Counted from the stretch's first letter, positions 14,938-63,881 are shown. The stretch is 64,000 nt of DNA from Botryllus schlosseri (GCA_051294905.1 CM119378.1:14818001-14882000), one strand, 5' to 3'. The notes: generated by a model from the letters alone, not told the origin. Program-made: numbers and translations.

Positions 14938-15570
14938 ATGGCCGCCAACAGACCAGAACTCTACCAAGAAGTGAAGCTGTACACTTCGGCTCGCGAGCGC
15001 GAACACTACGATAACTTAGCGGAAGTCTACTCCATCGTCAAGACTCTGCAAGCGCTCGAGAAGGCCTACATCAAAGACTCGATAACGGCGAAGGAATACA
15101 CTGGCGCGTGCTCGCGCCTGCTGGCCCAATACAAGGCCGCGTTCAGGCAAGTGCAGGCCAGCTACCGTACTCTCGAGGACTTTGTGAAGGAGTATAGGCT
15201 GGAGAGTTGCTCGGCGGCTTTAGAGAGGATAAAAGAAGACAGGCCAATTACGATGAAAGACGACAAGGGGAATACAAGCAAGTGTATCGCGGACATCGTG
15301 TCGCTGTTTATAACGGTTATGGACAAGCTGAAACTGGAGATTAGGGCCAAGGACGAGATTCATCCTGATTTGAAGGACTTGACAGACAGCATGGAGCGTA
15401 TGAGCACTTTGCCGTCGGGTTTTGAAGGGAAGGCGCAAGTCGACAGGTGGTTGAGTACTTTGAACGGTATGGCGGCGTCAGACGAGTTGGATGAGAATCA
15501 AGTCAGACAAATGGTTTTCGATATGGAATCGGCGTACAACGCATTCAATAAATTCTTGCACGACTCGTAG
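14938..15570 (+). CDS. VPS28: ESCRT-I subunit VPS28, single coding exon, 210 aa
   Basis: Uninterrupted ORF with [60 protein letters not shown]...[15 protein letters not shown]. Confidence 0.97.
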
Positions 15571-25014: not shown

Positions 25015-25340
25015 CTCGGTTCGGTTTATTAGCAATTTTTATCAGTTCAATACACCACAAAAATTGCGATACAGCCTAATGAGAAGATAGGAAGGTGTCG
25101 AAACGACTTGGACGCTGTCAAATCAGGTGATGCAGCTACGACGGCTGGCGATTACACCGACGAGTGTCAGATGAAAATATTCGGGTTTGTTGTACCAATA
25201 GGCCTATATTGAATTAATTATTCAAGAGTCCGATATTATGAAGCAAGTTCAGTTCGGTTCATTAACAATTTTATCAGTTGAACGCCACAAGATTGTGATT
25301 CAGTGAAAAGATAGGTATAAGTTGTCGAAACGACTTGGAG
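25015..25340. repeat. Diverged direct duplication of ~100 bp, spaced ~230 bp apart
   Basis: CAATTTT(T)ATCAGTT..CCACAA..AAGATAGG..TGTCGAAACGACTTGGA occurs twice. Confidence 0.7.
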
Positions 25341-25539
25341 CAGTCTCTGATATCAAACGGCCACCTACACGCCTATAGGCGATGTAAAGACGAGGCACGC
25401 ACGCCGCACACTGAAAGAAAAGTAAAACATGACAAGCGACAAAATGTGGTGGAAGGTGAGATCGATATGTCAGGACGTGGTCCAGTAGCCTAATAATCAA
25501 GAATAAATTGCTTGTGCAAAATAGTCGAAAAAAGGTCAA

Positions 25540-25790: not shown

Positions 25791-26046
25791 TTCTTCAACA
25801 ACACTGAGGCCAGCATATTCTGATTGTTCGCCACGCATTCTTCTTTTCTGCGAACTCTCCGAACAATCGGCCTTGACGGCTATTTCGGAGTGGTTCCGTC
25901 GCCATGTTAACATATTAATTGGTGTTTTCGGAATCAGCGCGACACTAGCTTTCGATTGAGACCTGTTTCATTAAATTTTAGTTCTGCCAGCTACAGGACT
26001 ACCAAACGCTTCTTTTAGCCGCCGTGTGTATATACGTACACTGTGT

Positions 26047-26298
26047 CGAGCGAGATAGTGTAACGGCGATGCGTTCGGCTTCTTGATCGGTAGGTCGTGG
26101 GTTCGATCCCAGGCCGGGTCAGACCAAAGACTCGAAAACTGGTATCCGTGGTTATCTCGCTAGTGCTCGGCGCTCAGCAACCACGGAGGAGAAAAAAGGG
26201 GGGTGCAGACTAGATGACCTCACTGTAAAGTCCGTATCGCATCTCCGTCGTCAAAACATTTCAATGGTGCAGGCGAAAAAGAATACCAGATCTCTCTC
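26047..26298 (+). mobile_element. tRNA-derived SINE, family A, with LINE-like 3' tail
   Basis: GAGATAGTGTAACGG..GGTTCGATCCC..CAGACCAAAGAC body, with tail CAGACTAGATGACCT...TCTCTCTC. Confidence 0.8.
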
Positions 26299-26734
26299 AC
26301 TGTGCAGCCTCATTTTGCCGCCCCCTTAGAGCCTGCCGCCCCTGGCGCAGAGCCAAAAACGCCAATGTGGCTGCTACGCCACTGCCTATATGCCCACTTA
26401 TCCTGCTGTCCACTGTGGCGAACCAAGCTTACCGAGCAATAGGCAGATATCCAACGGGGAAGACAACCCACAAGTCGTGGACTCGCGAAGGCGAAGGTTT
26501 TCAATCACCAAGTTGAGAATCATCCGATTGTTTCCCCCTTCGTCACATCATGGATTGGTTCCGTAAACGGCTCCGATCTGTTGTGGTGCTTATCAAATAT
26601 ACTGAGACGCGTAAGTCTTGTTTAGTAGGTAATTTGATGGATTGGGATGGGGTTATTATTAATTAATAATAATAATAATAATAATTTAATTTTGATAAAA
26701 TTATTATTGTAGGTAGCGGAAGAGATAAAGATAT

Positions 26735-27019
26735 GAAGCGATGCGTGTCGCCTTTTTCGCAAGTCCTACCTCAAATTCATTCGTTCTGGCATTGTCTGTC
26801 ATTTGCGTGAAGAAGCTTCTGTAGCTGGTTAGTAGTAATACCGTGATCGGTACGTCCGCTCGGTTATCAGTTATTCGCGATCACATGCATGGTCGATAAT
26901 GAATGTAGCAAGTGAAGTCCTCAGGTGTACAACGGAAACGCGTAAAAACGTGGCTCCACTGTAAAGCTGTTTGTACCGCATGTCACTCTCGCGCTCCATT
27001 GGCTATGTCACGTGGTCTC
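26735..27019 (+). promoter_or_regulatory. Host-gene promoter with motifs shared with the Pumilio promoter
   Basis: GAAGCGATGCGTGTCGC 26735-26751, TCATTTGCGTG, and CCATTGGCTATGTCACGTGGTCTC 26996-27019 (ATTGG plus a GTCACGTG E-box). Confidence 0.7.
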
Positions 27020-27870
27020 TCCGAGCTCAACTAAAAACCGCGCAGACGCCGAGTGGAGGATTGATCACAGTAGCAAATGCATAGTATATGCATCCGGAGA
27101 CATCGCCTGATCGGTTGGATTGTTTTAGGTGAGTGTTCTATAAAACTAAAGTTGAACATATTGTTTATTCTCATAATCCTTCATTGGATGCCGTATCTAC
27201 TCGTTGATACATATATCCTTTCGCAATAGGGCGAAGCTACGTAGGCATTGGCGCATTGCTGACTACGTAGACCTACAATGCAAAATAAGGGCCGATACTT
27301 TTATCAACTTGTAACTGTGGTTAACTGAATGTAAATAGAAAAAAGGCAAAGAAAAATTTGAAGTTAATAACTTGTCACCTGATTTAGAGCATTGAGATGT
27401 TTCTTTACTTTTCATTCATTGTACATGCCTCCTCTTTACATCGCTGGGTGTCTGATTCTGTAGACTACTCGAAGTCGCTTCGACACCTTCTGTCTTTTCA
27501 TTGTATCGCATTTTTGTGGTGTATTGAACTGATGAAAATTGCTAATGAACCAATGATGATAATGAAACAGCTTTGCCTAGACGTGTGCCATTAACTATTA
27601 GCTCAGAAATCACCTTTTGTAAGTGTTGTGCGTGATATTTCGACTTAACCATTGCCTGTTCAACGTATTATGTAATTGTATTACACTGTCGTTTCTGGTT
27701 TTTAATTATCACTGCCTTTGTGTTGCAGCTATATGAATGTGAGCAAAGGGAGGATGCGTGCTCTACTGTACTACTATAGCCTATTGTAGCATGGTCAGCT
27801 CCGTCTGCAATTTCTTCAGCATGCTCCTGTCTGTTTGGTGAGTTGAGAATCTGATTCTTGATTATATTGT

Positions 27871-27933
27871 TGCTTGTGATGACAACCTCATATCTATGAA
27901 TGTTCATGTATAAACGTCCGTGTTACTGAAGCA
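27871..27933 (+). ncRNA. C/D-box snoRNA, U18-like guide, copy 1
   Basis: C box GTGATGA 27876, D box CTGA 27926, terminal stem TGCT/AGCA, guide GTCCGTGTT complementary to conserved 28S AACACGGAC. Confidence 0.8.
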
Positions 27934-28150
27934 TCGAATAGTATAGTACAAGTAGAATAGGGAATTTCAATCTTATTGACATTGAACATCTTTCCTAGAC
28001 GGTATACGGTGCTACAAGTGTCAACCCACGAAGATCTGTCAACTATGACATCATACAACACCTTACCTTGAAGATCCTTGGAGCCCGCAGTCATCAAATC
28101 ATGGTCCCGTCATCTTGGTGAGTTTACAATCTATTTCATGACTCTATGCC

Positions 28151-28219
28151 AGCTTATGATGATAACTATACAAGACTTCTATGAATCTCTTATGTATAAT
28201 TGTCCGTGTTACTGAAGCA
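28151..28219 (+). ncRNA. C/D-box snoRNA, U18-like guide, copy 2
   Basis: C box ATGATGA 28156, D box CTGA 28212, stem GCT/AGC, same guide GTCCGTGTTA-CTGA. Confidence 0.8.
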
Positions 28220-28415
28220 TCGAACTGTATGTTGAGAGTAGTAAAGTGACAATCAGTCCTTCCTTCTTACTGACATTGACCTGTTTTGTAGCTATGGGCA
28301 GGACGATCTCTATGTCACGTCGCTTTGGTTCTTCTCACAGGCACCACAGCATGAGCCTGTCGGTTGTCTACAGTTGATCAACGGTGAGCATTGAATCACT
28401 TTTTATCCCAATTAT

Positions 28416-28482
28416 GCCTTGTGATGATAACTACTTCGACCTTTATGAATGTCTATGTATATACGTCCGTGTTACTGAAGGA
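28416..28482 (+). ncRNA. C/D-box snoRNA, U18-like guide, copy 3
   Basis: C box GTGATGA 28421, D box CTGA 28475, stem changed compensatorily to CCT/AGG, same guide. Confidence 0.8.
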
Positions 28483-28738
28483 TGGAACCGTGTGTTGAGT
28501 TGTAATGTAAATATCAGTATTATTCTGACACCGATGTTTCTTTTAAGGCGATGATTACCATGTAACAAAAGTGAATCGTTTTGCGCTAATGTCTTTGCCT
28601 GTCAGCTGAAGTGAAGGCTGTATCTCCCATCACCAGGCATCTTGGGTCGGCCACCCTGCTCTACAGTCTCCACACAATGTGCACCTGTTGCCATCGTTAT
28701 TTCAGGTTAGCTTTACATCTTGATATTTGATTTTTAAG

Positions 28739-28806
28739 GGCTCATGATGATAACTACTTCGACCTTTATGAATGTCTTATGTATACTCGTCCGTGTTACT
28801 GAAGCG
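28739..28806 (+). ncRNA. C/D-box snoRNA, U18-like guide, copy 4
   Basis: C box ATGATGA 28744, D box CTGA 28799, stem GCT/AGC, same guide. Confidence 0.8.
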
Positions 28807-29024
28807 TCAAACAGTATGGTTCGGGTATTGTTGTGAAAATTAGATGTATTAATACTGGCGGTTTTTCTGCAGGTGGGGACCCGCTGAATTCTTCTTCTTC
28901 GTGTGCAGAAGCGAGATGAGAGGATACCATACCATGGTTTCGGCTGTCACTGAATGTCGGACAAACCTTGGGAGTAAGATCAGGTTGGTTGATAGCATAC
29001 AGTTTCTGTATATCATTCATTTTT

Positions 29025-29091
29025 TGTCCTTGATGATCTATTCTTGTTCACGAGTTTTCGATGATTACATCAAGAGGCTGTTTCTGAGACA
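29025..29091 (+). ncRNA. C/D-box snoRNA, U95/SNORD95-like
   Basis: C box TTGATGA 29030, D box CTGA 29084, stem TGTC/GACA. Guide AGAGGCTGTTT-CTGA pairs with 28S GAACAGCCTCT and matches the 3' end of human SNORD95 as I recall it. Confidence 0.85.
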
Positions 29092-29285
29092 AGTCATGTT
29101 ATAGTTCCCTCATCACTCTTGTGATCTAAATGATGAAAATCACTGTCGTTTTTAATTCAGGTGTACGGTCTTGAGATATGTATGAACCTTGGCGATGCTG
29201 CGACACAATTTCGCTGTTCAGAATTTTTGCAAGATCTACACAGCTGAGGTTTGTACTTGAGAAGCTAGTTATTATACACATCAGT

Positions 29286-29350
29286 GCAAGTGATGAATTT
29301 AACCGATGGATACTACTGATTATCTCTGACGACAACTATGGTTCTGATGC
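29286..29350 (+). ncRNA. C/D-box snoRNA, U62/SNORD62-like (host-gene copy)
   Basis: C box GTGATGA 29290, D' CTGA 29316, D CTGA 29344, stem GCA/TGC. D' guide CCGATGGATACT would pair with 18S AGUAUCCAUUGG, the site equivalent to human Am590, if this species has that variant. Confidence 0.8.
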
Positions 29351-30919
29351 GTAGTTCGATGTTTCTTCATGTATATCACAAGTGGCGTGAGTTTTTGATT
29401 GTTCGATTTATTTGCAGGTTTATGTAAAGGTCTCCGGAATGCACACTCGGCAGCACTTCATTCAACAGGGATTTCTAGGCCCCATGCTTGTTGCCTGGGG
29501 TGATGGTACTGGGTTGAGCATTTAAATATTTTGCAGTGTTCAAATATATAATGTAAGTGTTAACTGTTGCTGCATGGTGTACTCCCGGGTCTCAGATCAT
29601 CATTTGATCTGCTGAAAACGATTTTGATGGTGTTTTTGTAGTCCTGTCCTGTGTTGGTGAATAAAAGCTGACTCTTCATGTATTCGTGTCCTGTCTGAGA
29701 TAGTATAAAGGACGAAAGGTAGGCCATTGTTTCTTTAGGGAGCCCCGCCCGTCATATATTGAAGGTGAAGTGTTCCTACAGAAGTAATCTACATTCGAAC
29801 TACAGCTAAAATCATCAGGACTACCGTTGCGCTCCAGCTGCCGTGATGATCGATCTTGTGTGCCTGGGTAGGGTCCTAATTGAGAGTGGAAACTGACTTC
29901 GATCCGTGCAGAACGTGTTTTTTTACAATAAAGAAGTAGGGGTTTTCAAAAGTGACCCTTATCGTACCGGCTACTTGATAAAATTGTTACGTTACCTAAT
30001 TAAGCCTACACACCGAATTTGATTCAATTCCAACCAGTGGAAGCGGAGTTGTCAAATTTGGATTATGAATAAAATAGTATCTACGGCAGGGCCGACCAGC
30101 CCGTGGCACGCGAGGTAATTTCCGAAATTTCTAATATCAAAAATGGATTGCACATATTGTGAACTTGCAAGGCGAACCAAAAATTTGATTAGTCTGGCCC
30201 CAACACTTGAGATGTGATGACTAAAATATCAGTTCCGACGCATTGACAGATCCATCGGCCATTCACATATTGGTATTTCTTCGTACACTACAATAAAGCA
30301 GAATAATTTGCGATAGATTTATCAAAGGATAAAAATTTTCTACAAGCTTGGTGCAACATGTTGTCACTCGATTTCTTGTTTTTAATATTGTTGCCCTTTT
30401 GTGAAAATGGAAGAATACCTAATGTATCAGATTGAGTCCAACTATATTCGCGAGTACGAGACAAAGTGTCGTTCAACATAGCCTATGCGACATTGCGTTT
30501 GCGCCCGCAGTAAGACCGTCGACTATGAAACCTAGGCACGAAATGATTGACGCATGTTGGTCGCAGCTTTCGATATCGATATGCCCATGCGCCGAATAGC
30601 CCAGTCTTCGCAAACTGAGCCCAGCGATATACAACAGGCCCGGAATACAGTCAAGTGACAATATTATTGACCTATGAACTTCAAAAAATTTTTGCGCTTC
30701 ACGCGGCTAGTGGCCCGCGCAATGTCAATCAGACATGGGGTAATCGTGATTAGTAATCGTAATCGATTACGACGATTACAGCATTTTCAAGTAATCGTAA
30801 TCGCAATCGATTACATTCGAAAAAAATCCGAAGTAATCGTAATCGACTACTTCCCATATCTAATCGATTTCTCAGTGAAAGAACGATTACTTTTTATTTG
30901 TACAAGGACTATGATATAA

Positions 30920-31607
30920 ACTGAACATTCGTGAACAAGGAAAATATGTTATACCAGGTTCGTGACAGCAATAACACCATCTCATCTGTACCTTTACGTA
31001 CCAATTTATCGCCTTACTACCGTAAGCATCGAATTTTGCGAGTTGATGAACTATATCGCTTCGAAGTATCAAAAGTTGTTCACAAATATTTTTCCAATAG
31101 TCTGCCTCCTGTGTTTGATGACTTTTTCATACCTGCTAAACATGTCCATTCCCATACACGAGATCCTCGTCTAAAGGAAACATCTATACTTACCCCCACC
31201 CAATAGCAATGATCTATCGACTACTCGGGACCTATCATCTGGAATGCATATTACCACCACATATCCGTGAATTGCCTTATAATAGATTCAAAAAAGCCCT
31301 ACTTGATCACATCTTGTCGTTACACTAACACTGTTGCCCTACCTCGCCCAGACATTGCTTCATTGATCATTTGCCACCATTGTTTTTTTTTTTCTATTTT
31401 CCTTTAACTAAACATTTCTTTACAGCCAGACTGTTCAGAGTCAAGTGTACCTGTTTGATGCTGGTGTGATCAGACTAGATGACCTTCACGGTCTTATCGA
31501 TCATTCCTATCTAATACCGAATACTGTGCGTGCACGCATATTTTCTGTACCACCATCACTGCCGTTCGTTATGTATTTTGGTTCGATGAAAATAAAGACT
31601 CTCTCTC
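30920..31607 (+). mobile_element. 5'-truncated LINE (CR1/L2-group) 3' end
   Basis: ORF remnant PYYRKHRILRVDELYRFEVSKVVHKYFSNSLPPVFDDFF..VHSHTR is typical of CR1/L2-clade ORF2 C-termini. It is followed by frameshifted GP.IWN and FKK.L segments and a 3' UTR ending AATAAA..(CT)n. Confidence 0.7.
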
Positions 31608-34570: not shown

Positions 34571-35495
34571 TCTGCGCCAGGGCCGACAGGCTCCAAGGGG
34601 GCGGCAGAATGAGGCTGCACAGTGCAATGTTCACTGTACACAGCCGGCTAAAAATAGCGTAATTGGTAGTCCTATAGCTGGCGACCAGAGAGCTAAAATT
34701 TAATCGAACTAGTCTTAATCGAAAGCACAAATCAAAATGTGAGCATGGCTATCGAACCACTCCGAAATGGCCGTCAAGGCCGATTGTTCCGAACAATCGG
34801 AGCGCTGCAACACAATGACCAATTAACCATGGTAATGGGAATTGTATTAAGCGATTATTCGAAACAATGCCGATTTTCAGACCTTGATATCTATTTCGGG
34901 GTGGTCCCGTTGCCGCATTAATTTCCTTCTCCAGCTGCAGGTCGGCCACTCCTGCCCTAAACAGTCTTATAGCGTTCATCAGTCTACCGAAAAGATTTCG
35001 TGTTGAGGATTTCCATGCCGTCACCCCCGCTCAACTAACCCACGTGTTCATCGTGTGATTTTCGAAAAGAACAATTAATTACGGTATTTCGTCCGTGTCA
35101 TAGTGCGAGCCCAATGAGAAATCCAAGTTGAGTACAATATCCCCATCGTTTGCCCTCCGTTGCACCCGTGTTACTACCGTCGTTGTGAAGGACCATAGCA
35201 TAACTAGTTCGTGACATCAAGCGACTGTAATCAAACGAGACTAAGGCGATTGCTTCACCATTCGTCATTTCCTTGATTGTTTCGCAAAATTGATCCTATT
35301 TATGGGATATAGCAATTGAAACATTGAGATTGGAGATGCGACGTGCAACAAGCATTCATCGGAGTGCGATTCAATTGTGGGAACAATTGTGGATTGGTCG
35401 TCAACATGGTTAGGTCATAATGCAATTCGTTGTCATTTTATAATCTTAACAATGAAGTATTATAGGTAGGTTTGGCGGCAAGACGAAATAGATAG

Positions 35496-35901
35496 GAAGC
35501 GATGCGTGTCGCGTTTTTCGCGCGCCAAATTCCTACATGGAATTCTTTTCTCATACCTCATTTGCGTGGAACTACTCGTGTGGAAGAGTGTTGCAGTTGG
35601 GCCGTGTTGTAGTTCATCGGTAAAGGTCAAGCTCATCGGGCCTCGCCAACTAAGCGTATAGTCAGTAATGCACCGTAGCAGAAGAAGTCAGCAAGTGTTT
35701 CGAGGCTACTCACCAAGCCTGTTTTAGCAGAAAATTGGTTTTGTACCTCTTGGTGCATGTGATCGTCGTGCGCCATTGACTATGTCACGTGGTCTCGTCC
35801 CATAATTCCAAGCTTGACTGGAGAAGCTACGGCTCAGGGAATGATGGCGTGTTAGCATCTATGTATATCTAAAGACATCGTTTGAACGCCTGGATTGTAT
35901 C
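35496..35901 (+). promoter_or_regulatory. Pumilio promoter and non-coding first exon (donor after 35901)
   Basis: GAAGCGATGCGTGTCGC 35496-35512, CCATTGACTATGTCACGTGGTCTC 35773-35796, and GGATTGTATCAG|GTAGGT paralogous to host GGATTGTTTTAG|GTGAGT. Confidence 0.7.
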
Positions 35902-36579
35902 AGGTAGGTGTATTCTCAATCGATAGCAATCATATTTGTGTCTTACATTATCATATACGGCGAAATGATTACTTATAGATAGGCGATAATTATCATTTCC
36001 AAGTCGCGCGACTGCAAAACGCGTTGACTACGATTGAAAATACCTCTGTCGCTTTGGTCGTCTGGTCAGCTGTTGCTGCAATCTAAGTTACGAATATTTT
36101 GACAGGCATTTGTAAATACTGTACAATGCAAAGGCCTGCCAATGTGGCTGGTGGTCAAGGCGGATTGTGGCCAGATGGAGTTCCGACTTATGGACAACTG
36201 CCATTGCAGTCGTTAAATCTGAGAAATACTGCGGTAAGATGGATACTCATACAATATTATGTAGTTAGCCGGTCTTTCTGTGTTAGATTTTGTTTGTTAA
36301 TGGAATTAATGTGTTATTTTGCATATATATATAGTAATTTTCAGTATTCTCATTGTGGTGTTGACAATGTTCCAATCTAATGTATTTATGTAGACAGCAA
36401 GGTTGATTTGCGCAAGGAAGGTGGTTGGTTAGCATTCATAATTTTGTTGAGATATTAACCTGCAATTCTCCCATCTGCAATTCTCCCGTAACTCGCAATT
36501 GATTGCACATAAATCAATATTGAAGATACATGTGTAGCCTTACTGTATATTGAGCCATATCTGGTAAGGACTAAATAAA

Positions 36580-37852
36580 GGCCCTGTGGATATAAAGCTG
36601 TATCAGCTGTATCACCCTGTGGATATAAAGCTGTATCAGCTGTATCACCCTGTGGATATAAAGCTGTATCAGCTGTATTCCGATCTTGGAGGCCGATTTT
36701 ATCATGAATTAGTAAAAATTTTTGCGCTTAACGCTGGCTCACTAAACAGTACAACAATAATTTCGTTGCAAAAGCGAACAAGGTGATGGGGGACGGTTTA
36801 TCATAGGGTTACCATACGTCCTCTTTTAAGAAGATTTGTCCTCTTTTTTGACTTTTTTGAAAGTGTCCTCGGAGGACGCCCTTTTGTCCTCTTTTGAAGA
36901 TTTAGGTCAAATTTAGAGCAAAATGTGAGTGATATGCCGTAAATTAGCACAGAAGTGACGCTCCGGCGGGTATTTCGGAGTGAAAAACGGTGATTTGAGC
37001 TATGAGCGAAAAGTTGACCTTTTTTTTTAATCAACCAATCACAAAGTGGTAAAATGCACCGATTTTTGAGAATTCTTCTCCGGTTTTGCAAGTCTCAAAT
37101 TTCTGAAAAAGCGTCCTCTTTTTAGATTTCCGAAATATAGTAAGCCTAGTTTATCACCCTATAGGAGCCCAAGATTCAAGGTTTTTTGGGGAGCCTGACT
37201 AAGTGCTGTTTCGTTCCTGCCAACGGGTATACACACCCGGAGATGTTTAATTAATTATTATTCGAGGGGTCCTACCTTTTCAAACACACCTCATTCAGCT
37301 CTACCGGTCGGTAGCCTAAATTAGATTACGTGAGCAACTGAGCATAGAGACGTTAAAAAAATCGATAGCAATCTATATGCAATTCCCGATCATATATTGA
37401 CCGACTCAATCATGAAATATAGAAATTTTTCTTTCTTCGCGCATGTAGGTGAGAAGAGCTGACTCACTAAATGTGTGACAGCCTACTATACTATTTCGCG
37501 CATCCCAGACATAGTATAGACCTGATACTAATTGCAGAGTGATACCTGGGTGAATCTCGGTACGGTTTGTCTATGATATGGGAGCAGGGATGATTCTCAA
37601 GTTGAAGTAATTAAAAAAGTAATATTAAAAAAATCAAGAATTGTTTGAACACAAGACACCGATTACATACAGGTAGAGTGATACAGCTGATAGCTGATAC
37701 AGCTTTATATCCACAGGGTGATACAGCTTTATATCGACAGGGTGATACAGCTGATACAGCTTTATATCCACAGGGTGATACAGCTGGTACAGCTTTATAT
37801 TCACAGGGTGATACAGCTGGTACAGCTGATACAGCTTTATATCCACAGGGCC
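36580..37852. mobile_element. Foldback/Mutator-like non-autonomous element with tandem-repeat TIRs
   Basis: Ends GGCCCTGTGGATATAAAGCTG.. in inverted orientation, built from ~33-bp units, with a perfect 9-bp TSD CTAAATAAA (36571-36579, 37853-37861). Confidence 0.85.
36804..37148. mobile_element. hAT MITE nested in the foldback element
   Basis: TIR TAGGGTTACCATA / TATAGTAAGCCTA, with perfect 8-bp TSD GTTTATCA. Confidence 0.9.
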
Positions 37853-40900: not shown

Positions 40901-43900
40901 CCGGTATAACCGTGTTTCCTTACTCCGACAGGGTATCCCGATCCCACTGGAGGAGGTCAATTTCCTATCATGCCCCAATACCCGTCTTATCCGAGCTGGC
41001 CCAATGTTGCCTACCCTTCCATGATAGCGCCTCACATGGCTTCATCGCAGCAAGCTGCTGCCCCTGCCACCAGCCTCCAGGTTTGTATGGCATGATCTCC
41101 AAAAGACTTGGATTGAATTTACCCATTGCTTTTTGTACAGGGCGGCAGACTATCTCAAACCGATGCGCAGATACCAAGATCGCAATCGCCACCCGTCCAG
41201 GCGGTGACGTCTGAACCAGGCGACCCGCCGACGTCTTTGCCGCCCCCTGTGTACCCGGATATGTTTAACGCTGCCGCGTTTGCGGGTCAGGGCGTCAATC
41301 CGGCGATGGCCATGTCCGGCTCTGGGTACCAGATGATTCCAGCTTACTACGACCAGAGCGGGGCTCTCATTGTGAACAGGGCCCCGGTCCATCTGCTGGC
41401 GCCTGGGATTCCTGCCCCGATGTTTCTCAACGGATCGCAAAGTGAGTGCCTACCGGTAGTTGATTCAGGAATGATGTTAACTGATCTGTGGTGGGGAACT
41501 TGAATATAGCTCTATTTCAAAAGTATATTTATCATAGCGTTAGTTCAACTCGAAAAACTTATTGCATGCCCTTTGCCCACTTTCAAGAGTTATAGGCACG
41601 ATGAAGGTAATAAGAACAGAGATCAATTCAAAACTAAGTGATAAGGGCGCATGAGAAGTTCATCAAGATGATGGATGTTATTATAAATCTACTTTCGCAA
41701 GAATGATTGTTGACTGCTCCTAACTTTCTGTTGATTAATGCCGCATACGGACAGTCGGACATGGTGCTCAATCAACATTTATCCCTTGATATTAACTATT
41801 GCAGTAAGAGATGCGTTGGCGGCGTGTCTGTAATTGAACCGTTTTAAGGTCAAAATGCTGGGATGTACACCAGTCCCAGTATGAGCGGTGGCAGTACCCC
41901 GGTTCCTGTACCGCCAAGCGGTTACAATCCTGGTAACATGGGTGGATTTGGCAGTTTGGGGTCGATCGCTGGAGGTCAGTTTTATCTCGCGAGTTGATCG
42001 TTCAGTTTTGACCTCGAGTTCGTTGCAGCTATGGGCAGTCAGTGCTCCACGCCGCAGAGAAGGGACTCCTTCTCTGACGTTACGAAACATCCGTCCTACG
42101 GAGGTCCCATGTCGCAGTTCTACAGCACGTTTGGGATGTCTCCGGCCGGCAGCGGTATGGGGATAGGCGCGATATCACCGTCTCCTGGACCACTGGGGGG
42201 CATGGTCGGATCTGCCCACAGCCACCACAGCATGAGCCCGCCACCTCTGTCGTCGCCCGGTGGATTTTTTGGTGAGTTGTAATTTGTAGATTCGCAAGAT
42301 TTCGATGTTGGCTTGTGATATTTTTTTAGGAGATAACGAATGTCTATGTATACTCATCCGTGTTACTGAAGCGATCGACAGTTTGATTTGCTCGGTTTTG
42401 TGAAAATCGGCTGTGCTATACATGTGCTGTGTTTTCTCAGGCGGTGGTGGTCACCGGATGTTTTCCGCGGCCCCAGGAGCGGAAGCGAGATACCGCAGTG
42501 GGTCCATGTACGGTTCTGCCAATGTCTTCGGCAATTCCGGGAGTTCACTGTTCCCTCCCACCAAGATCAGGTAGGCTGTCAGTGTCAGCAGAGGTCGACT
42601 TCTTTGAAGTGCTCGTTGGTGTTGCCTACCAGATTTGTTGGGTCCGAGAATGCTCACTTATTTAGTTGACTGAAAATTCTCTATACTTTTTTGCCTATTT
42701 GTAATGGTTGCTCAAGTGATTGATTTTAAACTGCTTCTTGGTTAGTTGTTGTGGTCAAAACTAGGCCTATAATAGAATATTCAAGTACTTGAAAATCCTT
42801 ACTTGTACTCGAGTAAAAATGGTTGCTTAGAGCACCTTCAGTTGTTAGTGATATTTCGACTTCAATTATTCATTCCATGATATTGATGTATCTATGAATT
42901 TTCAATTACACATCAAATCCCCCCCCCCCGTCATTGTAGCACTTGGCTTCTAGTGACGGAAATGACAAAGACTCGAACAGTTTGTTTTCTTTCTTCAGGC
43001 CAATATCGACCAAAGACGTGTCGCAGATGTCGGGACGCAGCAGACTACTGGATGACTTCAGGAACAACCGTTTCCCGAATCCGCAACTTCGAGACCTGTC
43101 GGGCCACATTGTTGAATTTTCACGAGACCAGCACGGCTCGAGGTACGCGCTCCTTCAGTCTAATGTCAGATACGTGCGAATGCGAGTGATGTATTTCAAC
43201 CGATGGATACTACTGAACTTCCATGTTGTCGACTACGGTTCTGATGCAAGATTCGTGAACGTTGGCGTATCTGATACTGCCGGCTGTATGTAATAATGTG
43301 ATTTTTCTTCCCAAAGGTTCATCCAGCAGAAATTGGAACGCGCCACCCTGCAAGAAAAGCAGATGGTTTTCAACGAAATAGCGAGAGCCGCTTATCAGCT
43401 GATGACTGATGTTTTTGGGAACTATGTTATTCAGAAGTTCTTCGAATTTGGCTCGCAGGTACGTGGTTTTCAACGATTTATCGTTTGATAGGTTCTCCAG
43501 GTTAATGATGATACTTCAGTTCTGACTCTATGATGTCAAAACTCTCTCTTACTGAAACCCCCACTGCGTAGCAGTATCACATAGTTTTAAGCTGCATGCC
43601 ACAGGGTTGACATCCTTATTTTGTTGCAGGAGCAGAAATTATCTCTCGCGAAATGCATAAGGGGCCACGTGCTCCCTTTGGCGCTGCAAATGTACGGTTG
43701 TCGAGTGATTCAGAAGGCTCTGGAATGCATACCCCAAGAAGACCAGGTTTGAGAGCCGTTCGTGTAACCTGAACTTGTGGCCTGTGACGATGATACTGTG
43801 TCCTTTATGAGCTTTTGTGATTTTTGCTATCTTTCCGAGGCTGAATAGCGATCTGTAGCAGCAGACTGCGTGAAACATCTGGGGCTGGGTTTGATTATAC

Positions 43901-46088
43901 TTCTGGTTTCAGGTGGAAATAGTCAAAGAACTGGACGGGCATCTCATCAAATGCGTCAAAGACCAAAACGGGAACCACGTTGTCCAGAAATGTATCGAGT
44001 GTGTCTTGCCCGTTCATTTGCAATTCATCATCGACGCTTTCAAGGGACAGGTGTTGCATCTTGGCTTGCTGTGGATGGGGTTTGGTTGTCTTTATCTTTG
44101 TTGCTCTGCAGGTGACACAGCTGTCCATGCATCCTTACGGGTGCAGGGTGATGCAAAGAATTTTGGAGCATTGTACTCCGGAGCAGACTGCGCCTATATT
44201 GGAAGAACTGCATCAGGTGTGTTGGTTCGGTGGTGATTTGTTTCTGTAGATTCTAATGTGTTGTTTTCAGGCCGAGTCGCTTGTCAGCGATCAATACGGG
44301 AATTACGTCATACAACACATTCTGGAGCACGGCCGCCCGGAGAACAAAAGCAAAATCGTTCTCGGTATCACGGGAAAGGTTTTCAAGCTGAGCCAGCATA
44401 AGTTTGCGAGGTACGGGTGGTCGGTTTCTGGATTATTGCTATCTCCCTGCAAGTTGTGTTTTTGTCATTTTGGACAAAGTGCAGCAGTGTAAACCTGTTT
44501 CTTGTTTTCGTGACAGTTTTGTATTGCTGCGCTTACACTAAATTGACAGCTGTCTTCGTTCTCTTGGTTGGGCAAAAGTGACTGTGGTAAAAAAAGTGTA
44601 GAAACTGTCAAAATAATTTAACTCTCATTAGCGGGAAGTTTGACTCGCTTGACTCGAATCATGAAAATAGATACTGGATTCAGATTCGAGTACTCAAATC
44701 GTTGCGGCCAGCCTTGGCAGCGCCGTTAGTTCTCTTTTATTTCGGCAGCAATGTCGTCGAGAAGTGCGTCTCGCACGCTTCGCGCATGGAAAGGGCGATT
44801 CTGATCGAGGAAGCCTGTCAAGAGCCGGAGGCTCTCTTGCACATGATGAAAGACCAGTACGCCAACTATGTGGTGCAAAAGATGGTGGACGTCGCAGAGA
44901 CGGCTCAACGAAACGTATGTGTAAATTTGTGGTCGGTTGCACATGACGTGGCAATTCCCAGCACATGCTGCAGTAGTGTAGTTTCAAAACTAAGATTTGG
45001 TTGAATGTCTCTCACGTTCGCCAGTTGTTCCTAAGACATGTCAGTGTTCTTTCCAATTCTCTACTAGTTGCTGACGATACCCCTGATGAGTGTCGGCTGA
45101 AAATATTTCGATACGTATATACTATTAAATTAGGCTTACCATACGTCCTCTTTTAAGAGGATTTGTCCTCTTTTTTGACTTTTTTGAAAGTGTCCTCGGA
45201 GGACGCCCTTTTGTTCTCTTTTTTGAGATTTTGTCCTCTTTTTTGAAAATTTAGGTCAGATTTAGAGGAAATTGCGAGTGATATGCCGCAAATTAGCGCA
45301 GAAGTGAAGCTCCGGCGGGTATTTCGGAGGGAAAAGTGGTGATATCAGCTCTGAGCGAAAAGAAGACCTTTTTTTTTTTTTTTTTGGTCATCCACCTGGC
45401 AATGTGGAGTGAAAAACGTGATTTTGAGCTCTGAGCGGAAGAGATGACCTTTTTTTTTTTCTTCTAAGTCAACCGATCATGAAGTGGGAAAAATTTACCG
45501 GTTTTTGAGAATTCTTCTCCAGTTTTGCATTTCTGAAAATGTGTCCTCTTTTTTCATTTCCGAAATATGGTAAGCCTATATTAAATTGTATACTCCGGAT
45601 AAGGATAGATTTGATTTGATTGAGGGGTCTCGTGCATCCCGGTTATTCCCATGTCATGACAAAACTACAAGTGGTAGTTCAAAGTTGAAGATCTGAAAAC
45701 TTGTTGGATGTCGCATACCTTCAGCCGACAATCGGCGGCTGCTACTTTTTGAATTGCAATTTCCGCAATACAGGGTGTATTTCGCATGGTTCTCGTGGCA
45801 ATTTCACTTGTAAAACTATAAGCACTTTTTACTGACCCCCTCTGGATGGTGTCGTCTTTATTCTCATTTTGACGGATTTGTGTTTGGTTTCAGATGCTCA
45901 TCACCAAGATACGGCCCTACACCGCTCAACTCCGCAAGTTCACATACGGCAAGCACATCATCGCCAAACTTGAGAGATTTCTGGTCAAGAGCGGAGCCGC
46001 GCCCGGCAGTGCCCTCGGCGCTGTCACGATGCCGCAAGGTCTCGTGTCTCCGCCTGTCGCTACGACCGTCGTGCAACCCAACCCTTGA
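37940..46088 (+). CDS. PUM: Pumilio (PUF RNA-binding protein), 19 coding exons: 37940-38099, 38158-38273, 38333-38427, 39021-39241, 39744-39922, 39982-40099, 40932-41080, 41141-41441, 41849-41974, 42029-42271, 42441-42570, 42999-43142, 43317-43458, 43630-43746, 43913-44050, 44112-44216, 44271-44410, 44749-44914, 45894-46088
   Basis: Phase-consistent GT-AG model. [23 protein letters not shown], and eight PUF repeats with canonical recognition motifs SRFIQ, NYVIQ, CRVIQ, NHVVQ, CRVMQ, NYVIQ, SNVVE, NYVVQ, then [16 protein letters not shown]-terminal low-complexity exons are slightly less certain. Confidence 0.95.
42311..42372 (+). pseudogene. Degenerate U18-like snoRNA in a Pumilio intron
   Basis: 3' half ATGTCTATGTATACTCATCCGTGTTACTGAAGCG matches the host copies. 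The C box is altered (GTGATAT followed by a T run) and the guide carries G>A. Confidence 0.75.
42865..42925 (+). pseudogene. Decayed remnant of the U95-like snoRNA in a Pumilio intron
   Basis: ATTCATT..TTGATG(T)ATCTAT..TTTTC..CATCAA aligns to host 29012-29073, but the guide and D box are replaced by a C run. Downstream GTCAT..GTGA..AAATGA also aligns. Confidence 0.55.
43182..43247 (+). ncRNA. C/D-box snoRNA, U62-like (Pumilio copy)
   Basis: C box GTGATGT 43186, identical D' guide AACCGATGGATACTA-CTGA, D box 43241, stem GC/GC. Confidence 0.8.
43500..43559 (+). ncRNA. C/D-box snoRNA, U26/SNORD26-like
   Basis: C ATGATGA 43505, D' CTGA 43522, C' ATGATGT 43530, D CTGA 43552, stem GGTT/AACC. Guide AACTCTCTCTT pairs 11 nt with 28S AAGAGAGAGTT, in the same register as human U26. 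Confidence 0.85.
43784..43848 (+). ncRNA. Candidate orphan C/D-box snoRNA
   Basis: C-like GTGACGA/ACGATGA, D'-like ATGA, C'-like GTGATTT, D CTGA 43841, lying 68 nt from the 3' splice site like the others. No target recognised. Confidence 0.5.
45131..45578. mobile_element. hAT MITE, same family, in the last Pumilio intron
   Basis: TIR TAGGCTTACCATA / TATGGTAAGCCTA, with perfect 8-bp TSD TATTAAAT. First ~85 bp nearly identical to the 36804 copy. Confidence 0.9.
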
Positions 46089-46134
46089 ATATGGCACGGC
46101 TGCGGTATTTTGTAGAAATGGTTTTCCAATGACT

Positions 46135-62443: not shown

Positions 62444-63881
62444 GTTCAAAATATTGACGGATTCCGTGTGTCCGCAAGCCAGCCGCTGGCCAGCCCGCTG
62501 GAAAATTTTTGCGGCACGGAATACGTTGTTCCGTTTCGCCCCTTATTTATTCAACTGCATCGACGCATGGTCGCCAATAAATAATGATGAATCTTGTACC
62601 GTACGCTTGTGGTATTGTGTTTTTTCCGCTGCACATAAGCACTGAGCAGGCGTTTGCTTCGATGTGCGGCGGTTTCCGCTCAGGTAGACAACAACGTGCT
62701 GCTTATTTGTGCAGTTAACGTGCGATTCCGGTCTCAGGCAATGCAGCGCGTGGTTGTAGGCAGTTATGTATCTTGGCTTTGCTGCAGTCACATCCTGTGG
62801 TTTGTGTTTACCGAACGCTGCAAGCATCAGGAATGCGCGATGCACTATTTTCGGCGAGCAGAGCCGTCTAGTAGAAGAGCGTTTTGAGATTTGGCTTACC
62901 TTGTCATCGGGGATTGATCATTGTTTGTAATTAATTTTGTAACGTGATGCGTTGTTAGAACGCAACCTGCGCTCACAAAGGCTGAAGGCAAAGCATCGTC
63001 TTGGTGACGCAGCAATTCGAGTTGAAGGAAGCGATGCGTGTCTGGACCGTAACCTGTTACCTAACAACATAGGGTAGACATCACGCTTGGTTGGTGTCCC
63101 ACATCGTTAGCCTACGCTGCAGACTGCATCTGTTTTTCAGATGCGGATCTAAATTTTTAGCGGCAAATATTCGGCTCTATTACGCCTCTTGGCGGAGCAG
63201 CGTTTGTGGCCTTGCTTTTTTCGGCAAGTGTCTCCAGAGGTGATCAAAGAAATCAGCTTTGGTACTGAAATACAAGTAACGACTAAATTTCTACTGGATT
63301 AAAAGTAGAAGTAGCAATTTCCATGACATGTCAAAGTTACTTCACGTGGAAGTAGAAATTGAAGAGTGACCAATCAATTTCAAAAAGTAGATTTCGTCGG
63401 ATAGTTTTAGCAGGTAAGGTGGCGACAATGATCGACAATCGAGTTATATTTTCATCTGAAGACACACACAACTGGGTTTGCATTTGAAACAAACGGTGTT
63501 TTAAAACACTTTGTATAAAAGTGTTTTAAACAAATGCCTTTTTGAAAAAATTATCATTTTTTTCAAACGTCAAATTATGTCATAATTGTGTAAATAGGGC
63601 CGAAAAACCATGTAGTATGAGCCTACTGACGATTCGCACCCAAATAGTCGGCGTATACGATGTACCATGTGGGGTAGCTGGACTCCTCGAAATCTTCGTC
63701 GGTTCAACAGTTTTTGCACATCGATATGGATCGTTGGTACGGAATGGGTGTTCTGACGGTGATAATGACCGCTGACCGTAAAATGCTGCATAACGATGTA
63801 GTCCTGGTAAAAGATATTTTTTATCTGTTTATGACAGTGATCAGAAGTCTTTTTCGTCAAGGAGGCACATTTACTCTATAT

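What the first reader, a model, noticed from the sequence alone, without database searches (positions are those of the whole stretch)
26700..29700. A non-coding snoRNA host gene born from a tandem duplicate of Pumilio
The ORF track shows nothing meaningful here, yet the region is a cleanly spliced multi-exon unit. Its promoter motifs, first-exon donor and later exons are recognisably the same as Pumilio's, 6-14 kb downstream. Shared items are GAAGCGATGCGTGTCGC, a 23/24 match at 26996 versus 35773, exon start CTATGGGCAG, CACCACAGCATGAGCC, GCRGAAGCGAGAT..AAGATCAG|GT and GAATTTT..CACRGCT(C)GAG|GT. Coding capacity is gone, most middle exons appear deleted, and an AATAAA truncates it just inside the PUF region. 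Splice sites and six intronic snoRNAs are intact. This looks like a snapshot of a GAS5/SNHG-type host gene being formed from a protein-coding gene, with the parent still next door. I do not know of this being described for Pumilio.
Basis: partly seen in the sequence, partly recalled or inferred. Interest (0 to 1): 0.93.

Follow-up and report, generated by a model that had tools for sequence, protein, structure and literature searches.

The report
Pumilio duplicate turned snoRNA host gene
In this sea-squirt genome, a partial copy of the Pumilio gene lying just upstream of the real one has lost its protein code but is still transcribed and spliced, apparently only to release six small nucleolar RNAs from its introns, which shows how such "inside-out" host genes can arise.

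Summary

- **Transcript.** RNA contigs and reads show an 8-exon, + strand transcript (about 26801-29680). All seven introns are GT..AG at the predicted junctions. Coverage stops just after an AATAAA.
- **Coding capacity.** The longest ATG ORF is 56 aa.
- **snoRNAs.** Introns 2-7 each hold one box C/D snoRNA, with the D box ending 69-76 nt before the 3' splice site. Four are copies with a U18-type guide, one is SNORD95-like, and one has an unknown target.
- **Homology to Pumilio.** The promoter, exon 1 and its donor, exons 4-6 (exon 7 weakly) and two intronic snoRNAs align colinearly with Pumilio, whose PUF repeats are confirmed by Pfam. These matches score well above controls.
- **Outgroup.** A related ascidian's Pumilio carries A-like, SNORD95-like and B snoRNAs in consecutive introns, the same order as host introns 5-7.
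- **Complementary loss.** In this genome Pumilio has lost the SNORD95-like snoRNA and its A copy has a damaged C box.

Caveats:
- Exon 8 shows no detectable PUF homology.
- Exons have decayed almost to noise, so this is not a fresh snapshot.
- Mature snoRNAs, the transcription start site, NMD sensitivity and the age of the duplication are untested.
- The 17-mer promoter motif recurs at a third site (63028), where it has 2 mismatches.

The scan's three other notes on this lie on the same window, not on other DNA.

The parts
26687..26800 (+). Promoter region homologous to the Pumilio promoter (35441-35560). It includes GAAGCGATGCGTGTCGC at 26735.
   Evidence: Local alignment score 71 against a control maximum of 34. 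End-to-end alignment. Exact 17-mer in both genes.
26801..27128 (+). Exon 1, non-coding. The 5' end is the start of the RNA contigs, not a mapped transcription start site. It contains the CCAAT/E-box-like 24-mer at 26996. Its 3' end and donor are homologous to Pumilio exon 1 (ending about 35906).
   Evidence: Contigs start at 26801 and 26811, with a junction 27128|27729. The 24-mer matches at 23/24. Donor region z = 6.1.
27129..27728 (+). Intron 1 (600 nt). It holds no intact C/D snoRNA. It contains a high-copy repeat at 27404-27551.
   Evidence: No C/D box pair found. The repeat matches 25023-25426 on the minus strand. RNA depth is in the thousands only over 27410-27570.
27729..27837 (+). Exon 2, a decayed copy of the cassette exon.
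   Evidence: Junctions. Its 3' end and donor align with E3, E4 and the Pumilio exon.
27871..27933 (+). snoRNA A1 in intron 2. Box C is GTGATGA, box D is CTGA, and the D guide is ACGTCCGTGTTA (U18-type).
   Evidence: The D box ends 69 nt before the 3' splice site.
27999..28117 (+). Exon 3, a decayed copy of the cassette exon.
   Evidence: Junctions. Alignment.
28151..28219 (+). snoRNA A2 in intron 3. Box C is ATGATGA, box D is CTGA, and it has the same D guide.
   Evidence: The D box ends 76 nt before the 3' splice site.
28292..28383 (+). Exon 4, a shortened homologue of Pumilio coding exon 42029-42271. It starts CTATGGGCAG and contains CACCACAGCATGAGCC.
   Evidence: Score 42 against a control maximum of 25. 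z = 5.4. Junctions.
28416..28482 (+). snoRNA A3 in intron 4.
   Evidence: Its best Rfam family is snoU18, sharing the guide GUCCGUGUU (E = 1.4, below threshold). The D box ends 69 nt before the 3' splice site.
28548..28705 (+). Exon 5, another decayed copy of Pumilio exon 42029-42271.
   Evidence: z = 4.8. Junctions.
28740..28806 (+). snoRNA A4 in intron 5. The rest of intron 5 aligns with the Pumilio intron up to its acceptor (28770-28872 with 42338-42440).
   Evidence: Score 76 against a control maximum of 25.. The D box ends 70 nt before the 3' splice site.
28873..28983 (+). Exon 6, homologue of Pumilio exon 42441-42570.
   Evidence: z = 5.4. Junction seen in the X2 contig.
29026..29090 (+). 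SNORD95-like C/D snoRNA in intron 6. Box C is TTGATGA, the guide is AGAGGCTGTTT, and box D is CTGA. It has no counterpart in this genome's Pumilio.
   Evidence: Rfam SNORD95 3' half, E = 0.38. An orthologue sits in the Pumilio intron of relative L004. No trace in 42571-42998. The D box ends 73 nt before the 3' splice site.
29161..29248 (+). Exon 7, a weak homologue of Pumilio exon 42999-43142. The last 29 aligned columns have 22 matches.
   Evidence: z = 2.4, with 11 of 500 shuffles as good. Junctions.
29284..29353 (+). snoRNA B in intron 7. Box C is GTGATGA, the D' guide is AACCGATGGATACTA followed by CTGA, and box D is CTGA. It is a paralogue of Pumilio 43181-43250.
   Evidence: 80.6% identity over 67 nt, E = 4e-10. 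Four-way alignment with two relatives..
29418..29680 (+). Exon 8, the terminal exon, with AATAAA at 29660. It has no detectable homology to Pumilio.
   Evidence: Junction 29248|29418; coverage drops to zero after about 29663. z = -0.7 against the first PUF exon.
35441..35906 (+). Parent gene: Pumilio promoter and non-coding exon 1. The donor at 35906 is inferred.
42029..43316 (+). Parent gene block that was duplicated. It holds exons 42029-42271, 42441-42570 and 42999-43142. Intronic snoRNA A' lies at 42315-42369 (C box GTGATAT, guide G>A). Intronic snoRNA B' lies at 43186-43244. Intron 42571-42998 has no snoRNA.
43317..46100 (+). The rest of Pumilio (PUF repeats), not present in the host gene. 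Further intronic C/D candidates lie at 43505-43555 and 43777-43843.
   Evidence: Pfam PUF hits on four exon translations.. No PUF relics elsewhere in the window.

Best explanation
The unit at about 26.7-29.7 kb is a non-coding snoRNA host gene.

**Origin.** It descends from a partial tandem duplicate of the Pumilio gene that starts 5.5 kb downstream. The copy kept four things:
- Pumilio's promoter.
- Its 5'-UTR exon 1 and donor.
- A block of three coding exons.
- The snoRNA-bearing introns that follow those exons.

The roughly 6 kb of middle exons and the PUF domain are absent. Inside the copy, the cassette 'exon 42029-42271 plus following intron with snoRNA A' was amplified to four tandem copies (E2-I2 to E5-I5).

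**How it works (inferred).** Pol II transcribes the unit from the inherited promoter. Splicing releases seven introns. Each of introns 2-7 yields one box C/D snoRNA. Each snoRNA sits at the distance from the 3' splice site known to favour splicing-coupled C/D snoRNP assembly. The spliced, polyadenylated RNA has only short ORFs. It is probably a by-product and a likely NMD substrate.

**After duplication.** The two copies degenerated in complementary ways. The upstream copy lost the protein. Pumilio lost the SNORD95-like snoRNA, and its copy of snoRNA A has a damaged C box and a guide mismatch.

**What is shown.** Transcript structure, absence of a long ORF, homology to Pumilio, intact boxes, and the outgroup arrangement.

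**What is inferred.** Production and activity of the mature snoRNAs, rRNA targets, NMD sensitivity, and the order and date of events.
For: **Transcript.**
- All seven junctions are GT..AG on the + strand.
- One 1168-nt contig spans all eight exons.
- The transcript is seen in runs from several studies.
- Coverage ends after the AATAAA.

**Non-coding.** The longest ATG ORF is 56 aa, and each frame has 16-20 stops.

**Homology and colinearity.**
- BLAST hits run in order 35247 > 35455 > 35755 > 35873 > 42023 > 42208 > 42338 > 43181.
- Scores are about twice the best of seven controls.
- Anchored z-scores are 4.8-6.1 for the E1 donor, E4, E5 and E6.
- The cassettes align together.
- Promoter and exon 1 align end to end.

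**Pumilio identity.** Pfam finds PUF repeats.

**Selection on snoRNAs rather than exons.** Among cassettes the snoRNA segment is 79-87% identical, against 40-51% for the exons.

**snoRNA anatomy.** All six have a C box, and the I6 copy reads UUGAUGA. The other features are:
- a CUGA D box;
- a C-to-D span of 54-60 nt;
- a D box ending 69-76 nt from the 3' splice site.

A strict C/D scan of both strands of the 64 kb window finds only five hits, four of them in these two genes.

**Guides.**
- GUCCGUGUU is shared with the Rfam snoU18 consensus.
- AGAGGCUGUUUCUGA is shared with the SNORD95 consensus.

**Outgroup.** Relative L004's Pumilio has A-like, SNORD95-like, B and C snoRNAs in four consecutive introns. 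The window's Pumilio intron 42571-42998 has no trace of the SNORD95-like snoRNA.
Against: - No small-RNA data were examined, so mature snoRNAs are not shown.
- Rfam matches are all below gathering thresholds.
- rRNA targets could not be checked, because no rRNA sequence was available.
- Host RNA depth is modest, about 30 in X1 and a few reads in the raw runs.
- Exons 2, 3 and 8 have no individually significant similarity to Pumilio.
- The 17-mer promoter motif recurs at 63028 with 2 mismatches, so on its own it does not show duplication.
- Whether other copies of these snoRNAs exist elsewhere in the genome is unknown.
- Whether the relative also has a host gene is unknown.
- The relative's A-like snoRNA has a different 3' guide, so the ancestral guide is unresolved.
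Confidence: 0.85

Rival explanations
1. This is a transcribed but functionless unprocessed pseudogene of Pumilio. The retained promoter still fires and the splice sites have not yet decayed. The intronic snoRNAs are redundant passengers.
For: Expression is low. No mature snoRNA evidence exists. Pumilio still carries B' with near-intact boxes.
Against: - Exons have decayed to 40-56% identity, while all 14 splice sites remain canonical.
- The six snoRNAs keep their boxes, their guides and a 69-76 nt spacing to the 3' splice site.
- The snoRNA cassette was amplified four-fold with the guide invariant.
- Pumilio's own A copy has a degenerate C box. Its SNORD95-like copy is gone, although it is present in a relative's Pumilio.
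Confidence: 0.08
2. The exons are upstream alternative 5' exons, or an alternative promoter, of Pumilio itself rather than a separate gene.
For: Same strand as Pumilio, 5.5 kb upstream, with a shared promoter architecture.
Against: - Exon 8 ends with AATAAA, and RNA depth is zero in 29664-29824.
- No junction leaves exon 7 or exon 8 towards Pumilio.
- The full-length contig ends in exon 8.
- Only 25.8-30.6 kb could be laid with reads, so rare read-through cannot be excluded.
Confidence: 0.03
3. This is an independent, older host gene. Its similarity to Pumilio comes from snoRNA mobility or gene conversion, not from duplication of the gene.
For: snoRNAs are known to move between hosts. In relative L005 the B-type snoRNA sits in a different Pumilio intron. 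The 17-mer motif also occurs at a third promoter-like site with 2 mismatches.
Against: - Similarity is not confined to the snoRNAs.
- It covers the promoter, the exon 1 body, the exon 1 donor, exon starts and ends, and intron tails.
- These matches run in the same order and with the same exon-intron boundaries as in Pumilio.
- Remnants of Pumilio coding sequence lie within host exons 4, 6 and 7.
Confidence: 0.04

Closest known systems
Non-coding snoRNA host genes of the UHG/GAS5/SNHG type ('genes with introns instead of exons', Tycowski et al. 1996, cited in PMC2831330; SNHG exons evolve neutrally, PMC11405852)
   Same: It is a spliced multi-exon RNA without a meaningful ORF. It carries one C/D snoRNA per intron. 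Its exons are far less conserved than the intronic snoRNAs.
   Different: - The protein-coding ancestor is identifiable and lies next door, with promoter, exon and intron homology still traceable.
- A 5'TOP start and NMD sensitivity, both typical of vertebrate SNHGs, were not tested.
- The organism is an ascidian.
Vertebrate PUM1 as a protein-coding snoRNA host (the human 1p35.2 locus lists PUM1, SNORD85, SNORD103A and SNORD103B: PMC9152224; that these lie inside PUM1 introns is from my own knowledge)
   Same: Pumilio carries box C/D snoRNAs in the introns in and around the start of its PUF-domain coding region. This is seen in this genome and in two related ascidians.
   Different: No Rfam match to SNORD85 or SNORD103 was obtained, so orthology of the individual snoRNAs is not shown. 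No non-coding Pumilio-derived host gene turned up in my literature searches.
Tandemly amplified exon-plus-snoRNA-intron cassettes of the imprinted SNORD115/116 and SNORD113/114 host transcripts (from my own knowledge)
   Same: One non-coding exon plus one snoRNA-bearing intron is repeated head to tail. The snoRNA is conserved and the exons are not.
   Different: There are only four copies here. The guide is of an rRNA type (U18-like) rather than an orphan. The cassette's origin from a coding exon of Pumilio is visible.
Duplication-degeneration-complementation (subfunctionalisation) of duplicated genes. The general idea that coding and intronic snoRNA functions can separate physically is noted in PMC2831330.
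   Same: The two copies lost complementary parts of the ancestral functions: protein in one, snoRNA cargo in the other.
   Different: The partition is between a protein and intronic RNA genes, not between regulatory modules or protein domains. The partition is incomplete, because snoRNA B is kept in both copies.
Rfam snoU18 (RF01159) and SNORD95 (RF00189)
   Same: The guide cores are shared with the family consensus sequences: GUCCGUGUU and AGAGGCUGUUU followed by CUGA.
   Different: Scores are far below gathering thresholds (15.5 against 47, and 20.3 against 55). In the snoU18 consensus the guide lies in the 5' half after box C, whereas here it lies before box D.

Membership tests
Non-coding snoRNA host gene (UHG/GAS5/SNHG type) | Spliced multi-exon Pol II transcript with its own 3' end | tested here: met
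   Seven GT..AG junctions. An 8-exon contig. Coverage ends after AATAAA at 29660. The poly(A) tail itself was not seen.
Non-coding snoRNA host gene (UHG/GAS5/SNHG type) | No long or conserved ORF in the spliced RNA | tested here: met
   Longest ATG ORF is 56 aa, with 16-20 stops per frame. Conservation of the short ORFs was not tested.
Non-coding snoRNA host gene (UHG/GAS5/SNHG type) | snoRNAs located in introns, typically one per intron | tested here: met
   Six of seven introns each hold one C/D snoRNA, ending 69-76 nt upstream of the 3' splice site.
Non-coding snoRNA host gene (UHG/GAS5/SNHG type) | Exons much less conserved than the intronic snoRNAs | tested here: met
   Paralogous cassettes: snoRNA segments 79-87% identical, exons 40-51%. 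Orthologue comparison was not possible.
Non-coding snoRNA host gene (UHG/GAS5/SNHG type) | 5'TOP-type transcription start | tested here: inconclusive
   Contigs begin at 26801 and 26811, but these are not mapped transcription start sites.
Non-coding snoRNA host gene (UHG/GAS5/SNHG type) | Spliced RNA unstable or NMD-sensitive, while mature snoRNAs accumulate | not testable with these tools
   Needs small-RNA sequencing and UPF1 depletion.
Box C/D snoRNA | Box C (RUGAUGA) near the 5' end and box D (CUGA) near the 3' end, with a short terminal stem | tested here: met
   All six have both boxes; the I6 copy has UUGAUGA. A strict scan requiring a stem of at least 4 bp passes two of the six, A1 and B. 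The other four stems were read by eye.
Box C/D snoRNA | Guide of 9 nt or more complementary to rRNA or snRNA, ending next to box D or D' | tested here: inconclusive
   Guide cores are shared with the snoU18 and SNORD95 consensus sequences. No rRNA sequence was available to test pairing. The target of snoRNA B is unknown.
Box C/D snoRNA | Match to a curated family at the gathering score | tested here: not met
   Zero gathering-level Rfam hits in the window. This is common for short invertebrate C/D snoRNAs and does not argue against the C/D architecture.
Unprocessed (duplicated) pseudogene of Pumilio | Homology to the parent that includes promoter, introns and exon-intron boundaries | tested here: met
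Unprocessed (duplicated) pseudogene of Pumilio | Disabled reading frame | tested here: met
   Only short relics of Pumilio peptide remain, such as GSSHRHHSMS against [10 protein letters not shown].
Pumilio/PUF protein (the parent gene at 35.4-46.1 kb) | PUF repeats | tested here: met
   Pfam PF00806 hits on four exon translations, E = 4e-6 to 3e-12.

The most novel reading that the evidence does not exclude
This locus is a worked example of how a non-coding snoRNA host gene is born. A protein-coding host (Pumilio) was partially duplicated in tandem. The daughter kept only the promoter, the splice sites and the snoRNA introns, and amplified one cassette. The protein and the snoRNA cargo were then partitioned between parent and daughter by complementary loss. 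The daughter is now the only source of the U18-type and SNORD95-like guides. If this path is general, it could explain the origin of UHG/GAS5-type genes whose ancestors are no longer traceable.
Probability: 0.55. Interest if true: 0.7.

Novelty: new member of a known kind. Interest (0 to 1): 0.6.

Why it matters
Non-coding snoRNA host genes have been known since UHG, but how they arise is mostly a matter of conjecture, because their exons evolve too fast to trace.

Here the parent gene, the daughter gene and an outgroup arrangement are all readable. The duplicated block, the internal cassette amplification and the complementary losses can be pointed to base by base. That makes a duplication-degeneration-complementation origin testable in a tractable chordate group. 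It also shows that a gene's intronic RNA cargo can be the reason a duplicate is kept.

In practice, it adds an unannotated-looking lncRNA and at least six C/D snoRNAs to the gene list of this genome. It also flags three or four snoRNA candidates in Pumilio's own introns.

Tried and rejected
- **Rfam at gathering thresholds:** no hits in the whole window. E-value scans gave only sub-threshold leads.
- **Relics of the missing exons:** tblastn of all Pumilio-region open frames against the rest of the window found no PUF or middle-exon relics in 29.7-35 kb or elsewhere. A whole-gene duplicate with a preserved 3' half is therefore rejected.
- **Exon 8 against the first PUF exon:** no similarity.
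- **Intron 1 against Pumilio intron 42571-42998:** a 22-nt match (27625 with 42841) is not above controls (score 34 against 32). It is left unexplained.
- **Finding orthologues in metagenome contigs:**
  - The snoRNA A pattern gave no hits.
  - The snoRNA B pattern gave two chance bacterial hits without C boxes.
- **HMMER with a Pumilio N-terminal exon:**
  - The library search found only two short fragments.
  - One of them has no contig on record.
  - Full-length ascidian Pumilio proteins, and so their upstream regions, could not be reached.
  - The duplication could therefore not be dated.
- **VPS28 search:** it served only to place the genome among ascidians.
- **tRNA scan:** nothing found.
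- **Literature searches:** no description of a Pumilio-derived host gene was found, nor of an SNHG traced to a neighbouring coding parent.

Full report
**Setting**

The window is eukaryotic, with 0.37-0.47 G+C and short introns. An intronless VPS28 ORF at 14938-15567 has its best named relatives in ascidians: Phallusia, Clavelina and Ciona at 73-75% identity. Closer relatives exist only as unnamed assembly fragments.

The gene downstream of the finding is Pumilio. Four exon translations between 43.3 and 44.9 kb hit Pfam PUF (PF00806), with E-values from 4e-6 to 3e-12. The N-terminal coding exons lie between 36.1 and 43.1 kb.

Other neighbours:
- A Patched/SSD-type gene at 7-12 kb.
- VPS28 at 15 kb.
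- A CDI-domain gene at 49.6 kb.
- A 5.5-kb stretch between the finding and the Pumilio promoter. It holds a non-LTR retrotransposon tail and tandem repeats, and no evident gene.

**Is the unit transcribed and spliced as claimed?**

Yes. RNA-derived contigs of two runs and raw reads of two further runs were laid on 25800-30600. They give these exons:

| Exon | Coordinates |
|---|---|
| E1 | about 26801-27128 |
| E2 | 27729-27837 |
| E3 | 27999-28117 |
| E4 | 28292-28383 |
| E5 | 28548-28705 |
| E6 | 28873-28983 |
| E7 | 29161-29248 |
| E8 | 29418 to about 29680 |

- All seven introns are GT..AG on the + strand.
- One 1168-nt contig carries all eight exons.
- Depth falls to zero in the bin after the AATAAA at 29660.
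- No junction leaves the unit towards Pumilio.
- Two small non-canonical 'joints' carry intervening letters and look like indel alleles of the same junctions.
- Depth is modest: about 30 in run X1 and a few reads in the raw runs.
- The very high depth at 25961-26282 and 27410-27570 belongs to repeats. The first is a tRNA-derived SINE with a GGTTCGATCCC box. The second is a high-copy element also present at 25023-25426 on the minus strand.

**Is it non-coding?**

The 1268-nt spliced sequence has 16-20 stops in each frame. Its longest ATG ORF is 56 aa. Relics of Pumilio peptide remain only as fragments, for example GSSHRHHSMS against Pumilio's [10 protein letters not shown].

**Is it homologous to Pumilio beyond chance?**

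BLASTN of 26400-29900 against the rest of the window gives a colinear series of hits in Pumilio:

| Host position | Pumilio position | Identity or E-value |
|---|---|---|
| 26525 | 35247 | weak |
| 26699 | 35455 | 82%, E = 2e-8 |
| 26978 | 35755 | 83%, E = 9e-6 |
| 27098 | 35873 | weak |
| 28286 | 42023 | weak |
| 28327 | 42208 | 87% |
| four intronic sites | 42338 | best two E = 1e-9 and 7e-7 |
| 29285 | 43181 | 81%, E = 4e-10 |

Unanchored local alignment of each host segment against Pumilio beats seven equal-sized control blocks about two-fold. This holds for the promoter, E1, E4, I2-I5 and I7.

Position-anchored alignments against shuffles gave the following:

| Segment | z-score |
|---|---|
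| E1 3' end plus donor | 6.1 |
| E4 | 5.4 |
| E5 | 4.8 |
| E6 | 5.4 |
| I6 | 3.3 |
| E7 | 2.4 |

E2, E3 and E8 showed nothing.

- Promoter and exon 1 align end to end, with conserved islands.
- The intron 5 tail aligns with the Pumilio intron right up to the acceptor, 28770-28872 with 42338-42440.
- Exon starts and ends coincide. CTATGGGCAG follows the acceptor in both genes. AAGATCAG|GT and GCT(C)GAG|GT close the matching exons in both.
- One caution: the 17-mer GAAGCGATGCGTGTCGC recurs with 2 mismatches at 63028, in front of what looks like another first exon. It may be a common promoter motif. The case for homology rests on the extended alignment, not on that motif.

**What was copied and what was not?**

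The daughter contains:
- Pumilio's promoter and 5'-UTR exon 1.
- Pumilio exons 42029-42271, 42441-42570 and 42999-43142.
- The introns that follow those exons.

The coding exons between 36.1 and 42.0 kb and the PUF exons are absent from the host gene. They are also absent from the rest of the window.

Within the daughter, the first exon-plus-intron cassette is present four times. E2-I2, E3-I3, E4-I4 and E5-I5 align with each other and with Pumilio 42015-42440.

**The intronic RNAs**

Introns 2-7 each contain one box C/D snoRNA.

- Box C is RUGAUGA, or UUGAUGA in intron 6. Box D is CUGA.
- The C-to-D span is 54-60 nt.
- The D box ends 69-76 nt before the 3' splice site in all six.
- From my own knowledge, this spacing is in the range reported as optimal for splicing-coupled C/D snoRNP assembly in mammalian cells (Hirose and Steitz 2001). 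Pumilio's own intronic snoRNAs have the same spacing.
- A strict scan needs a C box, a D box and a terminal stem of at least 4 bp. It finds only five candidates on both strands of the 64 kb window. Four of them lie in introns of these two genes.

The four cassette snoRNAs (A1-A4) share an invariant element, GTCCGTGTTA, in front of box D. The core GUCCGUGUU is also the guide in the Rfam snoU18 consensus. snoU18 is the best, though sub-threshold, family for this RNA (E = 1.4). From memory, this guide targets the conserved LSU site methylated by U18. I could not test pairing because no rRNA sequence was available.

The intron 6 snoRNA shares AGAGGCUGUUUCUGA with the SNORD95 consensus (E = 0.38). 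The intron 7 snoRNA (B) has a conserved D' guide, AACCGATGGATACTA, and no convincing family.

Among the cassettes, the snoRNA segment is 79-87% identical. The exons are 40-51% identical and the intron flanks 44-69%. Selection has therefore acted on the snoRNAs and splice signals, not on the exons.

**Outgroup evidence**

A search with the Pumilio exon 42031-42279 found two assembly contigs from other ascidians.

L004 is about 80% identical in coding exons and is the Pumilio orthologue. It carries C/D snoRNAs in four consecutive introns:
- An A-like RNA with the same 5' half as host A but a different 3' guide.
- A SNORD95-like RNA whose terminal stem, guide and D box match the host intron 6 RNA.
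- A B-type RNA.
- A fourth RNA matching window 43505-43555.

Host introns 5, 6 and 7 therefore reproduce the series A, SNORD95-like, B of an ancestral-type Pumilio.

In the window's own Pumilio:
- The A copy has a degenerate C box (GTGATAT) and a G-to-A change in the guide.
- The orthologous second intron (42571-42998) has no trace of the SNORD95-like RNA.
- B' and the fourth snoRNA are kept.

The more distant L005 has only a B-type snoRNA, in the first of these introns. B is thus the oldest Pumilio passenger, and snoRNA positions are not fixed.

**Interpretation**

The best reading is a partial tandem duplication of a snoRNA-hosting Pumilio. Three things followed:
- The daughter lost the reading frame and the middle exons.
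- One cassette was amplified.
- Cargo was lost in a complementary way from the two copies.

Shown here are transcription and splicing, non-coding status, homology, snoRNA anatomy and the outgroup arrangement. Inferred are that the snoRNAs are processed and active, that the spliced RNA is a by-product and likely NMD target, and the order and timing of events.

The near-random identity of the exons argues that the duplication is not recent. 'Snapshot of formation' is therefore too strong. The parent-daughter relationship is nevertheless still legible.

**Rivals**

- **Functionless transcribed pseudogene.** This is hard to reconcile with 14 intact splice sites, six intact and correctly spaced snoRNAs, an amplified cassette with an invariant guide, and decay of the parental copies.
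- **Alternative 5' exons of Pumilio.** The separate 3' end, and the absence of any joint towards Pumilio in the 4.8 kb examined, contradict this.
- **Independent host with snoRNA exchange.** This does not explain the homology of the promoter, exon 1, donor and exon boundaries.

**Comparison with the known**

It works like UHG/GAS5/SNHG-type host genes and meets the membership features that could be tested. A TOP start, NMD sensitivity and mature snoRNA accumulation were not testable.

Pumilio as a snoRNA host is not new. The human PUM1 locus lists SNORD85 and SNORD103A/B (PMC9152224). Cassette amplification recalls the SNORD115/116 hosts. The idea that coding and intronic snoRNA functions can separate is in the literature (PMC2831330).

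I found no description of a host gene derived from Pumilio. I also found none of an SNHG traced to an adjacent coding parent with complementary cargo loss. The library does not cover subscription journals.

**Verdict**

This is a real feature, correctly read by the first stage. It is a new member of a known kind, with an unusually clear origin. Interest is 0.6.

The scan's three other notes on this locus describe the cassette amplification, the cargo partition and Pumilio as a host. They come from the same window. I re-tested them here, and they are not independent support.

Noticed in passing
window 44460-44550 (+), in a Pumilio intron between PUF exons: A near-perfect 91-nt hairpin: -36.8 kcal/mol, z = -6.7 against shuffles. 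It gave weak sub-threshold Rfam hits to miRNA precursor models. It is a candidate intronic miRNA.
   Followed up: partly
window 43505-43555 and 43777-43843 (+): Two further C/D-box candidates lie in the next two Pumilio introns, each about 70 nt upstream of the 3' splice site. The first is conserved in relative L004 (about 3105-3160). The second has an imperfect C box.
   Followed up: partly
window 63028-63044 (+), with a likely exon 1 donor near 63414: The 'Pumilio promoter' motif GAAGCGATGCGTGTC recurs here upstream of what looks like another first exon. It may be a common promoter element in this genome.
   Followed up: partly
window 26050-26135 (+): A tRNA-derived SINE-like element with a GGTTCGATCCC box lies just upstream of the host promoter. 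RNA depth is in the thousands and reads run off into unrelated sequence, so it is a dispersed repeat. ARAGORN calls no tRNA.
   Followed up: partly
window 27404-27551 (+) and 25023-25426 (-): A high-copy repeat inside host intron 1, with an inverted partner 2 kb upstream. RNA depth is in the thousands there.
   Followed up: no
window 27625-27646 and 42841-42862 (+): A shared 22-mer, about GTGATATTTCGACTT plus flanks, lies in host intron 1 and in the snoRNA-less Pumilio intron. It resembles the 5' half of snoRNA A with a deletion and may mark decayed extra copies. The match is not above controls.
   Followed up: partly
window 36582-36678 and 37695-37827: Perfect 33-nt tandem arrays in opposite orientation, about 1 kb apart, in the first coding intron of Pumilio. 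They resemble the terminal inverted repeats of a transposon.
   Followed up: no
window 14938-15567 (+): A complete VPS28 (210 aa, Pfam E = 5e-70) is encoded in one uninterrupted ORF. It is either an intronless gene or a retrocopy.
   Followed up: no
window 30931-31206 (+): An ORF that I read by eye as the C-terminal tail of a non-LTR retrotransposon protein, in the spacer between the host gene and Pumilio. No family search was run. RNA depth is high nearby, at 29986-30600.
   Followed up: no
L005 2358-2440: In the more distant relative, the B-type snoRNA sits in the intron after the 42029-type exon, which is the position of A in the other two species. The next two introns are short and empty. 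snoRNAs have therefore moved or been lost between Pumilio introns.
   Followed up: partly
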